Positions 2,690 through 20,797 are shown, numbered from the stretch's first letter. The stretch: 34,979 nt of DNA from Octopus bimaculoides (GCF_001194135.2 NC_068982.1:15666302-15701280), one strand, 5' to 3'. Numbers and translations are program-made. Notes: generated by a model not told the origin, from the sequence alone.

Positions 2690-3410
2690 TCTTTTATTCG
2701 TCTATTCTTTTATTCTTTTATTCGTCTATTCTTTTATTCCTCTATTCTTTTATTTGTTTCAATCATTAGACTGCTGCCATGCAGTGGGGGGGCACCACCT
2801 TGAAGAATTTTAGTTAAACAAGTCGATCCCAAAATGCCTGGTACTCATTCTATCGGCCTCTTTTGGCAAACTGCTATGTTACAGAGATATAAACACACCA
2901 ACACTGGTTGTCAAGCAGCAGTGGGGGAACAAGCACCCACACACACATACACACAAGCTGTATACAAATATATATGTGTGTGTGTGTATGTGTATATATT
3001 CTTTTATTCTTTTATTTGTTTCAGTCATTTGACTGTGGCCATGCTGGAGCACAACATTTAGTCAAACAATTTGACCCTAGTACTTATCCTTTTGAAGCCT
3101 GGTACTTAATCTATTGGTTCCTTTTGACAAACTGCTAAGTTACAGGGGCGTAAACACACCAACATTGGTTGTCAAGTGATGGTGATGAGACAAACATAGA
3201 CACACAAACACACCGCACACACACACGCACACACACACACACATATGCGTCGGGCTTCTTTCAGTTTCCATCTACCAAATCCACTCATAAGACTTTGGTC
3301 AGCTTGAGGCTATAGTAGAAGACACTTGCCTAAGGTGTTATGCAATGGGAGTGAACCCAGAACCATGTGGTTGGTAATCAAGCTTCCTACCACACAGCCA
3401 TGCTGCATCT
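2690..3410 (-). mobile_element. Two consecutive SINE family A copies (tail-only 2690-2990; full 3000-3410)
   Basis: Family A tail and head motifs; the first has an expanded (TTTTATTC)n 3' tail at 2684-2755. Confidence 0.85.
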
Positions 3411-3420
3411 ATATATATAT

Positions 3421-4077
3421 ATATTTTAAATACAACAAAGAATTAAGTAAAATTACTTAGTTATCATTAAGCTAGTGTTAGGAACATAAATTGTGACTAA
3501 GGTTTGGTGGAAGATTTTAATTCAGAACTTTTGAAAACAAGACATTTGTACTACAGAGCCAGAGGTGGTTTCAGCCCGGTTGGTATCAAAAGGGTTAAAT
3601 TCATCATGTGTTAACCCTTTTGTTACTATATTTCTGTTGAGGTGCTCTGTGTTTCTTTTAATTAATTTTAAATATAACAAAGAATTTAGTAAAATAACTT
3701 AGTTATCATTCAGCTAGTGTTAGGAACATAAATTGTGACTAAGGTTTGGTGGAAGATTTTAATTCAAAACTTTTGAAAACAAGACATTTGTATGACAGAG
3801 CCAGTGGTGGTTTCAGACAGGTTGGTATCAAAAGGGTGAAATTAATCATTTGTTAACCCTTTTGTTACTATATTTCTGGTGAGGCACTCTATGTTTCTTT
3901 CAATTAATTTTAAATATAACAAGGAATTTAGTAAAATAAATTAGTTATCATTAAGTTAGTGTTAGGAACATAAATTGTGACTAAGGTTTGGTGGAAGATT
4001 TTAATTCAAAACTTAAGAAAACATTTGTACTACAGAGCCAGAGGCGGTTTCAGTCAGGTTGGTATCAAAAGGGTTAA
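3421..4077 (+). mobile_element. Tandem trimer of a ~220-bp piggyBac-type MITE (first unit 5'-truncated)
   Basis: Units end at 3594, and span 3615-3836 and 3857-4073; TIRs CCCTTTTGTTAC..GGTATCAAAAGGG; TTAA flanks; 12-bp spacers. TTAA target plus CCC..GGG termini is the established piggyBac signature. Confidence 0.8.
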
Positions 4078-5529: not shown

Positions 5530-6725
5530 AATATGAGCTTAGATTCTATGACTAGCTCCACTGGATTCCCTGTAATCCTCCTAAATATACGTAGAGAAGC
5601 TGTTTGCAAAGCCACCCCAGATACTTTTTCATGGCTTTCTAGCAAACAGAAAATTTCCAAAAGGTGTAAGTTGAGCAGATGTTAAAAATTATAGGCCTAC
5701 CTCTTTGACTTCATGTATGGAATGAATTAGCAGAAGAAGATTTCTCATGTTTTAAGAAGAAAATGACCAAAATGACTAATACTCAGCATGGCTTTCACCC
5801 TGGAAGAAGCTGCCTTACGAAATTCCTGCAACACTACTACAGAGTGTTGTAACAGCTGTTTCGTCATGGCTATGCATGTTATATATGCTAACTTTGCAAA
5901 GGCCTTCAGTAAAGTTGATCAGGAGATAGTGAGCTTAAAATCTCATCATCTTAGTATAGTCAGAAAATTAAGAGTGGCTCAAATGACATTTTAACCATTT
6001 CGTTACCATATTTCTGTTGAGATGCTCTGTGTTTCTTTTCAGTTAATTTAAATATAACAAAGAATTTAGTAAAATAACTTAGTTGTCATTAAGCTAGTGT
6101 TAGGAACATAAATTGTGACTAAGGTTTGGTGGAAGATTTTAATTCAAAACTTATGAAAACAAGACATTTGTATTCAGAGCCAGAGCCGGTTTCAGCCGGG
6201 TTGGTATCAAAAGGGTTAAATTAATCATTTGTTAACCCTTTTGTTACCATATTTCTGTTGAGATGCTCTGTGTTTCTTTCAATTACTTTCAATATAACAA
6301 AGAATTTAGTAAAATAACTTAGTTATCATTAAGCTAGTGTTAGGAACATAAATTATGACTAAGGTTTGGTGGAAGATTTTAATTCAAAACTTATGAAAAC
6401 AAGACATTTGTACTCAGAGTCAGAGCCGGTTTCAGCCAGGTTGGTAATGAAAGGGTTAAGTAACAGAAATCAGGAAGTTACTGCTTATTGTTCTCTGTCA
6501 AGGGAAATGTAAGTTCTAAGACAAGTCCCACAGGGAGACGTCTTTGGGCTGTTGCTGTTTGTAGTGGCACTATCAGATGTGCTTTCAGTTATGCAAACAG
6601 ACATTCTTACTAGCTGTACTTGATGGTACAAATGTATCTCGGGCCAAAACGAAACCCTCTGATGCTGAAATCCTAAACTAAAACCTTTATGCAATTTAGA
6701 AGTAGATTGAAGGAAATGACTATCC
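5530..6725 (+). mobile_element. Degenerate CR1/L2-type LINE reverse transcriptase fragment, split by a MITE dimer
   Basis: Ordered RT motifs across frameshifts: GFPVILL (5563), KNYRPTSLTS (5684), QHGFHPGRSCLT (5784), VIYANFAKAFSKVD (~5878), EWLK then ILSNRNQEV across the insertion, VPQGDVFGLLLF (6525), decayed YADD-equivalent (~6612-6630). Confidence 0.85.
5995..6455 (+). mobile_element. Dimer of the piggyBac-type MITE
   Basis: Units 5995-6215 and 6236-6455; TTAA at 5991-5994 and 6456-6459; internal TTAA-ATTAATCATTTG-TTAA junction. Confidence 0.85.
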
Positions 6726-6859
6726 GAGATTCCAGATGAACCATTGTTACACACCGAATGATTGTTGGGGTGTACCAGTTGCATACGCAGTGCTACGGGA
6801 TGGCCACAACCTTCAGGCTGGAAGTGATATACATATATATATACACACACACATTCATA

Positions 6860-7864: not shown

Positions 7865-8610
7865 TAGCTCTTTTACTGGTTTCAGTCATTTGACTGTGGC
7901 CATGCTGGAGCACCACCTTTTGTCGAACAAATCGACCCCAAGACTTGTTCTTTATAAGCCTAGCACTTATATTATCGGTCTGTTTTGCCAAACCGCTAAA
8001 GTACAGGGATGTAAGCACACCAGCATTGGTTGTGAAGCAATGGTAGAGGGGCAGACACACATACACACACACACAAATATATATATATAACCACACAACT
8101 ATAATGGACCCCAATATCTGACTGGTACTTTATTACATAGACCCTGGGAAGATGAATGATGAAGCTGATCTTGGCAATATTTGAACTAGAAACAAAATTC
8201 TAAGTAGTTCTGTGGTAAGAAGTTTACTTCCCAACCACATGGTTCCGGGTTCAGTCCCACAGTGTAGCACCTTGGGCAAGTGTCTTCTACTATAGCCTCA
8301 AGTTGACCAAACTCTTGTGAATGGATTTGGTAGATAGAAACTGAAAGAAGCCTGTTTTATGTATATCAATGTGTGTGGTGTGTCTTTGGGTCCATGTTTG
8401 TTCCCCCACCACCACCACTTGACAACCAGTGCTGGTGTGTTTACATTCTTGTAACTTAGTACTTTGGCACCAAAGAGACCAACAGAATAAGCATCAGACA
8501 TTACTAAAAAGTAAGCACTGGGGTCAATTTGTTCAACTAAGATTCTTCAAGGCAGTGCCCCAGCATGGCCACAGTCTTCTAATGACTGAAATGAATAAGA
8601 TAAATGATAT
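7865..8610. mobile_element. SINE A tail (-) 7865-8090, SINE E fragment (-) ~8110-8190, SINE A full copy (+) 8200-8610
   Basis: Motif matches to the reference copies in this window. Confidence 0.8.
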
Positions 8611-10099: not shown

Positions 10100-10810
10100 G
10101 ACTTTTACTTGTTTCAGTCATTAGACTGTGGCCATGCTGGGGCAACACATTGAAGAATTTTTTTAGACACATGAATTGACCCCAGGACTTATTCTTTTTA
10201 AGCCTGGTATTTCTTTTCTCAGTCTCTTTGCTGAACTGTGAAGTTACAGGGATATAAACAAACCAACACTGGTTGTCAAGCAGTTGTTGGGGACAAATGC
10301 AGACACATACACACACATCAATATATATATATATATATATATAGGTGTGGAAGTAGCTTGCTTACCAGCCACATGATTCCGAGTTCAGTCCCACTGCGTG
10401 GCACTTTGGGCAAGTGTCTTATACTATAGCCTCGGGCCGACCAAAGCCTTGTGAGTGGATTTGGTAGACAGAAACTGAAAGAAAGCCGTCGTATATATAT
10501 ATATATATATATGTTTGTATGTCTGTGTTTGTCCCCCCAACATTGCTTGACAACCGATGCTGGTGTGTTTACGTCCCCATAACTTAGTGGTTTGGCCTAA
10601 GAGACCAATAGAATAAGTACTAGACTTACAAAAAATAAGTCTTGGGGTCGATNNNNNNNNNNTATATATATATATATGATAGGCTTCTTTCAGTTTCTGT
10701 CTACCAAATCCGTTCACAAAGCTTTGGTTGGATCGAGGCTATAATAAAAGATACAATGTGACATGCAATGGGACTGAACCGGGAACCGTATGGTCGTAAA
10801 GCAAACTTCT
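10100..10810. mobile_element. Cluster of SINE A pieces: tail (-) 10100-10310, head+tail (+) 10343-10652, head (-) 10675-10810
   Basis: Motif matches; N-gap at 10653-10662. Confidence 0.8.
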
Positions 10811-15339: not shown

Positions 15340-15512
15340 GCACAGGTGTGGCTGCGTGGTAAGAAGCTTGCTTCCCAACCACATGGTTCTGAGTTCAGTC
15401 CCACTGAGTAGTACCTTGTACAAGTGTCTTCTACTATAGCCTCGGGCCGACCAAAACCTTGTGAGTGGACTTGGTAGACGGAAACTGAAAGAAGTCCGTT
15501 GTAAATATATAT

Positions 15513-17399: not shown

Positions 17400-17612
17400 G
17401 ATCTGGTCTCTTACACATACCCTATAATGTCACTGTGGAAATAAGAACCTCTTCTTCAAAACTTTAAGCTGTGAGATAATACATGGTAAATTCAAAACAA
17501 AGTGGAACAACAAGCATTACATTTAGCAGAGTAATTTGAATACTAGAGAATTAAACAGGAAGCTTTTATCAGAGAACCATAGGTGGTCTCAGGCGGATTG
17601 GCATCAAAAAGG
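17400..17612. mobile_element. Divergent relative of the piggyBac-type MITE
   Basis: End GGTGGTCTCAGGCGGATTGGCATCAAAAAGG resembles the MITE right end GGTTTCAGCCGGGTTGGTATCAAAAGGG; interior differs. Confidence 0.45.
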
Positions 17613-17752
17613 TTGTAAATGGACAGGCACATTAGCTAATGTAAATAAGTAGATCAAAATCCACCATGTTCTGGTAAAAAAAACCCCAGAAAGAACAAAA
17701 AAACAGGAAAGTCTCAGCTGGTTTATCTTTGATCATAGTTCTGCTTGATCAG

Positions 17753-20640: not shown

Positions 20641-20797
20641 CGGTATGGCTGTTTAGTAAGAAGCTTGCTTCCCTACCACATGATTCAGGGTTCAGTCCCA
20701 CTGAGTGGCACCTTGGGCAAGTATCTTCTACTATAGCCTCAGGCCGACCAAAGCCTTGTGAGTGGATTTGGTAGACAGAAACTGAAAGAATCCCATC

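What the first reader, a model, noticed from the sequence alone, without database searches (positions are those of the whole stretch)
5991..6459. The MITE dimer appears to have transposed as one composite element into a single TTAA
Seen: removing 5995-6459 restores GAGTGGCTCAAATGACATTTTAAGTAACAGAAATCAGGAAGTT, colinear CR1-type RT sequence between the AFSKVD and VPQG motifs. The 12-bp spacer is therefore not host sequence but cargo carried between two units. Inference: outer-end mobilisation of a captured-spacer dimer, which also dates the MITE as younger than the LINE.
Basis: partly seen in the sequence, partly recalled or inferred. Interest (0 to 1): 0.7.

Follow-up and report, generated by a model that had tools for sequence, protein, structure and literature searches.

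The report
Two-unit piggyBac MITE array insertion
Two head-to-tail copies of a small non-coding cut-and-paste transposon, joined by a fixed 12-base linker, sit inside an old LINE fragment of an octopus genome; the same linker at a second site shows that such blocks move as one piece, which is a well-documented case of known transposon behaviour.

Summary
Positions 5991-6459 read TTAA, unit 1 (221 nt), TTAA, ATTAATCATTTG, TTAA, unit 2 (220 nt), TTAA. The units are 93% identical and carry CCC...GGG terminal inverted repeats, as in piggyBac-type MITEs. Removing 5995-6459 restores one TTAA and a continuous LINE reverse-transcriptase reading (...F/I-L-S-N-R-N-Q...VPQG).

It has 2.7 units in the same orientation, a different right flank, and the same 12-nt linker at both junctions (one identical, one 10/12). 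The linker therefore belongs to a ~241-nt repeating unit and is not LINE sequence. It cannot have arisen locally.

The best reading is that a multi-unit block inserted through its outer ends, and that copy number can change by unequal exchange. Capture of the linker from host DNA is inferred only.

The window is Octopus DNA. Coral CMITE dimers fetched from metagenomes show the same architecture (TTAA, 12 nt, TTAA) at nine or more loci, five of them checked and showing unrelated flanks.

This is a new member of a known kind and of modest interest. A genome-wide census in octopus could not be run.

The parts
5991..5994 (+). Left TTAA target-site copy. It spans the Leu codon (TTA) and the first base of the Ser codon of the LINE reverse transcriptase.
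5995..6215 (+). MITE unit 1 (221 nt). The left inverted repeat is CCATTTCGTTACCA (2 changes from consensus); the right is TGGTATCAAAAGGG.
6216..6235 (+). Inter-unit junction: TTAA, 12-nt linker ATTAATCATTTG (6220-6231), TTAA. With the adjoining inverted repeats it forms an 18-nt inverted repeat around a 12-nt loop.
6236..6455 (+). MITE unit 2 (220 nt). The left inverted repeat is CCCTTTTGTTACCA; the right is TGGTAATGAAAGGG.
6456..6459 (+). Right TTAA target-site copy.
5590..5990 (+). Decayed LINE reverse-transcriptase fragment, left of the insertion. Motifs: NYRPTSLTS 5687-5713, QHGFHPGRSC 5784-5813, AFSKVD 5902-5919. The 5' limit is approximate.
6460..6790 (+). The same LINE fragment, right of the insertion. 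Motifs: SNRNQEV from 6460, VPQGD 6525-6539, LDGTN 6619-6633, FQMNHC 6730-6747. The 3' limit is approximate.
3422..4077 (+). Second array of the same family, 2.7 units in the same orientation. Unit A is 5'-truncated at a (TA)n run (3422-3594). Then TTAA 3595-3598, linker ATTCATCATGTG 3599-3610, TTAA 3611-3614, unit B 3615-3836, TGAA 3837-3840, linker ATTAATCATTTG 3841-3852, TTAA 3853-3856, unit C 3857-4073, TTAA 4074-4077. The right flank is unrelated (GATATTTCTTTG...).
17573..17614 (+). Diverged (79% identity) fragment resembling the 3' end of the unit. It is a remnant of an older relative and not part of the arrays.

Best explanation
The feature is a non-autonomous piggyBac-type transposon (MITE) of an Octopus genome. 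In this family the unit that moves is often a short head-to-tail array rather than a single unit: unit, TTAA, fixed 12-nt linker, TTAA, unit.

Shown here:
- The block at 5995-6455 lies in a single TTAA inside a decayed LINE reverse-transcriptase gene.
- Its linker also occurs in an independent array 1.9 kb upstream, so the linker is a heritable part of a ~241-nt repeat period and not local DNA.

Inferred:
- A transposase supplied in trans paired the left end of the first unit with the right end of the last unit. It then cut and pasted the whole block, as in macrotransposition.
- The linker is a remnant of the ancestral site where the first dimer formed. That could have happened by two insertions into TTAAs 12 nt apart, or by a TTAA-mediated tandem duplication of one unit plus 16 nt of flank.
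- Arrays with more than two units arise by unequal exchange between units.
For: Anatomy. The units have TTAA at all boundaries, CCC...GGG inverted repeats of 14-18 nt, and no ORF longer than 52 aa.

Empty site. Pfam RVT_1 aligns in one stretch across the junction, at 26.7-28.0 bits against 16.9 for the left flank alone. The distance from AF.K to QG is 170 nt (57 codons minus 1 nt). That equals the 57 residues in human L1 ORF2p, whose sequence was verified against PDB 8c8j. Only 3 of 20000 shuffles reach the gapless score.

Linker as a family feature. Three junctions at two loci read GGGT[TG]AA-ATT[AC]ATCAT[TG]TG-TTAACCC. The junction motif GGGTTAA-N12-TTAACCC, searched with up to two mismatches, is expected 0.13 times by chance. 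The chance of a 12/12 identity is about 1e-7. The right flank of the second array is unrelated, and that array has 2.7 units with period 242.

Both units at the finding share four substitutions and one indel not seen in units B and C of the upstream array. This argues against a recent copy from that array.

Analogy. CMITE-type dimers with a conserved 12-nt linker lie at nine or more contigs; in the five compared, the outer flanks are unrelated to one another, and two of them (L116, L013) show outer TTAA on both sides.

Organism. SINE-derived peptides from the window hit only Octopus bimaculoides and O. vulgaris proteins.
Against: Only two loci of the family could be examined, and the left end of the second is truncated. 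No second complete block with two unrelated TTAA flanks was seen in octopus.

No natural LINE homologue could be retrieved to show the empty site directly. Pfam hardly penalises a 5-residue insertion at this point (28.0 against 26.8 bits). Exact colinearity therefore rests on motif spacing and on the second array.

No family copy was found in 100 kb of other octopus DNA. Abundance and the monomer-to-array ratio are unknown, and the two neighbouring arrays may share a local history.

Within-array similarity exceeds between-array similarity (6.6-7.6% against 7.9-10.3% divergence). Local homogenisation or local duplication would also give that pattern.

No transposase partner was identified.
Confidence: 0.7

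Rival explanations
1. A single unit inserted at the LINE TTAA and was later turned into a dimer. The mechanism would be ectopic gene conversion or unequal recombination with the same-orientation array 1.9 kb upstream, which supplied the linker and a second unit.
For: The two arrays are 1.9 kb apart and co-oriented. The linker at the finding is identical to the upstream B-C linker. Two sites group unit 1 with B and unit 2 with C. The family is absent from 100 kb of other octopus DNA, so the neighbours may be historically linked.
Against: Both units of the finding share four substitutions and one indel that units B and C of the upstream array lack. A converted unit should carry the donor's variants. 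Divergence between the arrays (7.9-10.3%) is higher than within them. Conversion that inserts a 241-nt loop is less parsimonious than one insertion.
Confidence: 0.1
2. A multi-unit block did insert as one piece, but not as a dimer. A longer or different array inserted and then contracted or expanded in place by unequal sister-chromatid exchange.
For: Copy number varies between the two arrays, 2 against at least 2.7. Array-specific shared variants suggest homogenisation within arrays. CMITE blocks of two and three units exist.
Against: Nothing in the window argues against it directly. It is a variant of the best explanation and keeps composite insertion.
Confidence: 0.12
3. A monomer inserted and then duplicated in place by replication slippage. 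This is the mechanism proposed for coral CMITE arrays.
For: Wang et al. 2010 (PMC2872659) favoured slippage for tandem CMITE arrays. The two units are each other's closest relatives.
Against: A local duplication can use only local sequence at its junction. The 12-mer ATTAATCATTTG is absent from both flanks (5/12 and 4/12 matches), yet it is identical to the linker of another array (about 1e-7 by chance).
Confidence: 0.03
4. Two independent single-unit insertions landed in two TTAA sites 12 nt apart in the LINE, so the spacer is LINE sequence.
For: If the 16 extra nt are kept, AFSKVD and VPQG fall in one frame at 62 codons. Pfam loses only about 1 bit.
Against: The same spacer separates units at two junctions of an array with a different right flank. 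Keeping it would place a stop codon and five residues inside the F-L-S-N-R motif, and would give 62 rather than the canonical 57 residues between AF.K and QG.
Confidence: 0.02
5. Assembly artefact: two haplotypes, or a collapsed repeat, written in tandem.
For: The window contains 897 N in gaps, so it is a scaffolded assembly.
Against: There are no N within or next to either array. The units differ by 6.6%, far more than alleles would. The linker structure recurs at three junctions and in an unrelated family from other datasets.
Confidence: 0.02

Closest known systems
CMITE tandem arrays of Acropora corals (Wang, Zhang, Meyer, Matz 2010, PMC2872659)
   Same: Both are piggyBac-type MITEs with TTAA duplications. 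[quoted passage not shown] In contigs fetched here the CMITE-type junction is TTAA, 12 nt, TTAA, which is the octopus architecture.
   Different: There is no sequence relationship beyond the TTAACCCTTT terminus. The units are about 93-100 nt rather than 221 nt, and the linker sequence differs. The authors attributed arrays to replication slippage, not to movement of the array. The octopus case adds an insertion whose empty site can be reconstructed.
Ac/Ds macrotransposons of maize (Huang and Dooner 2008, cited in PMC9910405)
   Same: The outer ends of two closely linked elements in direct orientation are used together, so that the elements and the DNA between them excise and reinsert as one transposon.
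   Different: That system belongs to the hAT superfamily with 8-bp duplications, carries kilobases of cargo, and was shown experimentally. Here the superfamily is piggyBac-type, the cargo is 12 nt plus two TTAAs, and the event is inferred from sequence only.
Tandem TE dimers from double insertion, as seeds of satellites (McGurk and Barbash 2018, PMC5932611)
   Same: Head-to-tail dimers of DNA transposons keep target-site sequence in the junction and can then expand by unequal exchange.
   Different: In Drosophila the dimers are formed anew at each locus, with only the duplication in the junction. Here one junction sequence is inherited across loci, which implies that the dimer itself transposes.
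Tandem-repeat-containing MITEs of molluscs, e.g. DTC84 of Donax trunculus (PMC3879986)
   Same: A mollusc genome, and a short mobile element associated with a short tandem array of variable copy number (abstract).
   Different: In DTC84 the repeats are internal and sit between one pair of terminal sequences. Here every repeat is a complete element with its own inverted repeats and TTAAs.
Bacterial composite transposons and IS tandem dimers
   Same: Two copies of an element bracket intervening DNA and are mobilised through the outer ends (established knowledge).
   Different: These are prokaryotic, use different transposase families, and carry functional cargo.

Membership tests
piggyBac-superfamily non-autonomous element (MITE) | Insertion at TTAA with duplication of TTAA | tested here: met
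   TTAA lies at all four unit boundaries of the finding and at five of the six sequenced boundaries of the second array (the sixth reads TGAA). The reconstructed empty site has a single TTAA.
piggyBac-superfamily non-autonomous element (MITE) | Terminal inverted repeats beginning 5'-CCC and ending GGG-3' | tested here: met
   CCCTTTTGTTACCA and TGGTA[TA]CAAAAGGG, with 14-18 nt arms that are 89-94% complementary.
piggyBac-superfamily non-autonomous element (MITE) | Small, with no coding capacity | tested here: met
   Units are 220-221 nt. The longest ORF over any unit is 52 aa. No Rfam family matches.
piggyBac-superfamily non-autonomous element (MITE) | Several copies with unrelated flanks | tested here: inconclusive
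   There are two loci in the window with different right flanks. A related 137-nt monomer with the same termini lies in O. bimaculoides L004 16483-16626. No further copy of this exact family was found in 100 kb of octopus DNA.
piggyBac-superfamily non-autonomous element (MITE) | Autonomous partner with a DDE transposase and matching ends | not testable with these tools
   No octopus genome could be searched at the DNA level, and no transposase ORF is evident in the window.
Composite (macro)transposon moved by outer ends | Two complete elements in direct orientation bracket the carried DNA | tested here: met
Composite (macro)transposon moved by outer ends | One target site for the whole block, with colinear flanks once the block is removed | tested here: met
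   This rests on reverse-transcriptase motif order and spacing, not on a sequenced empty allele.
Composite (macro)transposon moved by outer ends | The same carried DNA at other loci with unrelated flanks | tested here: met
   The identical linker occurs at 3841-3852 and a 10/12 variant at 3599-3610, in an array with a different right flank. Its left flank is lost by truncation.
Composite (macro)transposon moved by outer ends | Observed excision, or presence/absence polymorphism, of the whole block | not testable with these tools
   No population data or orthologous octopus sequence was accessible.
CMITE family of Acropora | Sequence homology to the conserved CMITE internal region | tested here: not met
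   blastn of the octopus consensus against the nine CMITE-type loci gave no hit. The architecture is alike, but the element is not a member.
Satellite DNA | Long homogeneous arrays of tens to thousands of monomers | tested here: not met
   The arrays have 2.0 and 2.7 copies.
Helitron/Helentron-borne tandem repeats of molluscs | No inverted repeats, no target duplication, and repeats internal to the element | tested here: not met
   Each unit has its own inverted repeats and TTAAs.

The most novel reading that the evidence does not exclude
The TTAA, 12 nt, TTAA junction may not be an accident of capture. It may be a recurrent and perhaps mechanistically favoured architecture of piggyBac-type MITE multimers. 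It is seen with unrelated linker sequences in octopus and in coral CMITEs, and in CMITEs it is shared across variants with different inverted repeats. If so, head-to-tail multimers would be regular transposition substrates, and transposition itself would create and disperse proto-satellite arrays. The published slippage explanation for CMITE arrays would then be incomplete.
Probability: 0.15. Interest if true: 0.6.

Novelty: new member of a known kind. Interest (0 to 1): 0.33.

Why it matters
The case shows how a cut-and-paste element can spread tandem copies of itself, which is one proposed first step from transposon to satellite DNA. It shows this in a cephalopod genome, where DNA-transposon biology is little described.

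It also suggests that the tandem 'gapped' arrays reported in corals were dispersed by transposition rather than made afresh at each locus.

For annotation, the ~241-nt period (unit plus TTAA, linker, TTAA) should be modelled as one family. Otherwise repeat-masking pipelines will split it into a MITE and a tandem repeat.

The mechanism itself, use of the outer ends of linked elements, is already established in other superfamilies, so the general significance is modest.

Tried and rejected
Searches that led nowhere:
1. Natural LINE homologues to show the empty site. These were tried with:
   - a protein search using the stitched reverse transcriptase (none);
   - PDB sequence searches (only a spurious hit);
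   - BLASTP against verified L1 ORF2p (uninformative);
   - no paralogue in the window or in four octopus loci.
2. More copies of the MITE. A 25-mer core gave 0 hits in metagenome, prokaryote-genome and viral contigs. A six-frame ORF bait gave no hit. Exact look-up of ten window ORFs found none on record. Four octopus loci (100 kb), reached through a SINE-peptide bait, held only diverged relatives.
3. Literature searches for the sequence and for FLSNR gave nothing useful. Rfam gave no match.
4. Pfam scoring with and without the spacer does not discriminate, at 28.0 against 26.8 bits.

Readings considered and rejected:
- two independent insertions;
- in-place slippage;
- assembly artefact;
- Helitron-borne repeats;
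- satellite DNA;
- the spacer as a remnant of an internally deleted third unit (no similarity to either unit end).

Flank similarities judged to be chance:
- The left LINE flank resembles the linker at 5/12 positions.
- The upstream array's right flank resembles it at 7/12.

Full report
**What is there**

Positions 5991-6459 consist of two head-to-tail copies of a 220-221-nt sequence. The order is:
- TTAA (5991-5994);
- unit 1 (5995-6215);
- TTAA (6216-6219);
- ATTAATCATTTG (6220-6231);
- TTAA (6232-6235);
- unit 2 (6236-6455);
- TTAA (6456-6459).

The units match at 213 of 228 aligned positions. Each unit begins CCCTTTTGTTACCA and ends TGGTA[TA]CAAAAGGG. These are 14-18-nt inverted repeats of the CCC...GGG type, flanked by TTAA. 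From established knowledge, that is the signature of the piggyBac superfamily.

No ORF over any unit exceeds 52 aa, and Rfam finds nothing. Each unit is therefore a non-autonomous element, a MITE. TTAA occurs at 0.0055 per position in the window, so four boundary TTAAs are not chance.

**The empty site**

The flanks belong to one decayed LINE reverse-transcriptase gene:
- NYRPTSLTS (5687-5713), QHGFHPGRSC (5784-5813) and AFSKVD (5902-5919) lie on the left.
- SNRNQEV (from 6460), VPQGD (6525-6539), LDGTN (6619-6633) and FQMNHC (6730-6747) lie on the right.

Pfam RVT_1 aligns across the junction in a single stretch. It scores 26.7-28.0 bits with the flanks joined and 16.9 bits for the left flank alone.

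The TTAA spans the Leu codon and the first base of the Ser codon of the sequence L-S-N-R. From AF.K to QG there are 170 nt, which is 57 codons minus one base. Human L1 ORF2p has 57 residues over the same interval; my recalled fragment was checked as identical to PDB 8c8j residues 362-474. With both anchors in register, only 3 of 20000 shuffles reach the gapless score. From memory, chicken CR1 and Drosophila jockey also have 57; that is a lead, not a test.

The missing base lies in the T-run at the site. The best reading is ...RVAQMTF-L-SNRNQEV.

Keeping TTAA plus the spacer would give 62 codons, with a stop and five residues inside the motif. Pfam alone cannot exclude that, because the score drops only from 28.0 to 26.8 bits. 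No natural homologue of this LINE could be retrieved.

**The decisive observation: a second array**

The same family occurs again at 3422-4077, in the same orientation. This array holds 2.7 units with a period of 242 nt.
- Unit A is truncated at a (TA)n run.
- Units B and C are complete.
- The array ends ...AAAAGGG-TTAA, followed by unrelated sequence (GATATTTCTTTG...).

Its two internal junctions carry ATTCATCATGTG (3599-3610) and ATTAATCATTTG (3841-3852). The second is identical to the spacer in the finding. The motif GGGTTAA-N12-TTAACCC occurs three times in the window against 0.13 expected. A 12/12 identity has a chance of about 1e-7.

The spacer therefore travels with the units. It is neither LINE sequence nor filler made at this site. 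It also changes the picture: the element is a ~241-nt repeat (unit, TTAA, linker, TTAA) of variable copy number, not a unique dimer.

**Relations among the units**

Divergence is 6.6% within the finding, 6.8-7.6% within the upstream array, and 7.9-10.3% between the two arrays.

Four substitutions and one indel are shared by both units of the finding and absent from units B and C. Two T/C sites, and the identical linker, pair unit 1 with B and unit 2 with C. No site supports the third grouping.

The signal is mixed. It fits inheritance of a two-unit block with some homogenisation inside arrays. It argues against a recent copy of one unit from the neighbouring array.

**Where the window comes from, and what else could be sampled**

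The window holds 12 copies of a roughly 150-nt SINE. Peptides translated from its consensus hit only Octopus bimaculoides and O. vulgaris proteins among 5.8 billion, so the window is Octopus DNA.

Four loci fetched through those proteins gave 100 kb from O. bimaculoides GCA_001194135.2 and O. vulgaris GCA_951406725.2. They contain no copy of this family at 80% identity or more. They contain only diverged relatives:
- a solitary 137-nt monomer with the same termini and a related core, at L004 16483-16626;
- interrupted copies at L001 14860-15200 and L004 4828-4920.

At the window's density (2 loci in 35 kb), about 5.7 loci would be expected in 100 kb. The two arrays therefore look clustered. 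That is compatible with local transposition, but the species of the window is unknown, so this is weak evidence. A genome-wide census was not possible with these tools.

**An independent parallel**

I scanned metagenome contigs for AAAGGGTTAA-N12-TTAACCCTTT. Most hits look like unrelated hairpins. The scan also returned nine loci of a different MITE: L006, L012, L013, L023, L068, L091, L099, L108 and L116.
- Its units are about 93 nt.
- The ends in L108 match the published CMITE family II consensus of Acropora corals.
- The units form dimers and trimers joined by TTAA-AAACTATCTCC[CT]-TTAA (L099 carries a diverged AAAACTATCTAT).
- In the five loci compared (L116, L068, L013, L023, L091) the flanks are unrelated to one another.
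- L116 and L013 show complete dimers with outer TTAAs on both sides.

L068 begins TTAA-linker-TTAA-unit. That is what precise excision of the first unit of a trimer would leave.

Wang et al. 2010 described such arrays, 'including one with gaps', and proposed replication slippage. A single linker at many unlinked loci instead implies that the blocks were dispersed as blocks.

This is the multi-locus evidence that I could not obtain for octopus, and it shows the mechanism is plausible for piggyBac-type MITEs. Because my pattern fixed the spacer at 12 nt, the coincidence of length cannot be evaluated.

**Mechanism**

Shown:
- one block of two units plus the linker occupies one TTAA;
- the linker is inherited across loci;
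- copy number varies.

Inferred:
- A piggyBac-type transposase supplied in trans paired the outermost left and right ends and moved the block. Maize Ac macrotransposons behave this way, as do bacterial composite transposons.
- The linker is a relic of the site where the first dimer arose. The dimer could have formed by double insertion into neighbouring TTAAs (compare McGurk and Barbash 2018). It could also have formed by a TTAA-mediated tandem duplication.
- Unequal exchange changes copy number.

Folding of the block pairs the outer ends and forms an 18-bp hairpin at the inner junction. This follows from the layout and is not evidence of function.

**Rivals**

- Conversion of a monomer by the upstream array (0.10) is disfavoured by the variants shared within the finding.
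- Insertion of a block of another size followed by a local change of copy number (0.12) is a variant of the main reading.
- In-place slippage (0.03), two independent insertions (0.02) and assembly artefact (0.02) are contradicted by the shared linker, the motif spacing, the 6.6% divergence between units, and the absence of gaps in or beside the arrays.

**Verdict**

This is a new member of a known kind: tandem-array-forming piggyBac-type MITEs and composite mobilisation. Interest is modest.

The most novel reading not excluded is that the TTAA, 12 nt, TTAA multimer is a recurrent and favoured architecture. An unbiased census of spacer lengths would test it.

Noticed in passing
window 3246-3410, 30137-30283, 8211-8352, 15349-15498, 20645-20794, 28557-28709, 21434-21586, 10345-10491, 1946-2077 and others: There are twelve copies of a roughly 150-nt SINE (consensus GGGCTTCTTTCAGTTTCCGTCTACCAAATCC...). 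Peptides translated from it match only Octopus bimaculoides and O. vulgaris annotated proteins, so some octopus gene models contain SINE-derived exons. This identifies the window as Octopus DNA.
   Followed up: partly
L006, L012, L013, L023, L068, L091, L099, L108, L116 (metagenome contigs): Coral CMITE-type MITEs (about 93-nt units) occur as dimers or trimers. They are joined by a conserved 12-nt linker AAACTATCTCC[CT] between TTAAs at nine or more loci; the five compared have unrelated flanks. Variants with different inverted repeats share the linker. This implies dispersal of whole blocks, not slippage at each locus as published.
   Followed up: partly
L068 1503-1518: The array starts TTAA-linker-TTAA and then the first unit, as if the first unit of a trimer had been excised precisely, leaving its linker behind.
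   Followed up: no
L072 2340-2760: An AT-rich contig (24% GC, long intron-less ORFs, possibly a giant virus or a protist) has a roughly 190-nt tandem pair with the junction GGGTTAA-CTTTTTAATCAT-TTAACCC. Its 12-mer shares the 8-mer TTAATCAT with the octopus linker (P about 0.001-0.005, post hoc). It may be an intergenic hairpin rather than a MITE.
   Followed up: partly
window 5988-5994: The LINE reading frame slips by one base in the T-run at the insertion site. The best reverse-transcriptase reading needs TTTTTAAGT, but the window has TTTTAA|GT. The loss may be ordinary decay; a link to the insertion cannot be assessed.
   Followed up: partly
L004 16483-16626 (O. bimaculoides): A solitary 137-nt MITE has the same termini (CCCTTTTGTTACC...GCAAAAGGG) and a related core, flanked by TTTA and TTAA and by host DNA. 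It is a shorter monomeric relative of the window's family.
   Followed up: partly
L001 14860-15200 (O. bimaculoides): A diverged relative of the unit is interrupted at an internal TTAA by a different piggyBac-type MITE (TTAACCCTTTAAGCACTC...TTAAAGGGTTAA). This is nested insertion between MITE families.
   Followed up: no
L002 11072-11652 (O. vulgaris): Two roughly 80% identical copies of another piggyBac-type MITE lie in the same orientation, separated by about 110 nt. They are a tandem pair with a long spacer.
   Followed up: no
window 17573-17614: A 42-nt fragment is 79% identical to the 3' end of the unit (…GGCGGATTGGCATCAAAAAGGTTGT). It is a remnant of an older related element.
   Followed up: no
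window 3410-3425: The upstream array is cut within unit A exactly at a (TA)n run that follows a SINE. The first 53 nt of the unit are nowhere else in the window, so a deletion or microsatellite-associated loss removed the array's left end.
   Followed up: partly
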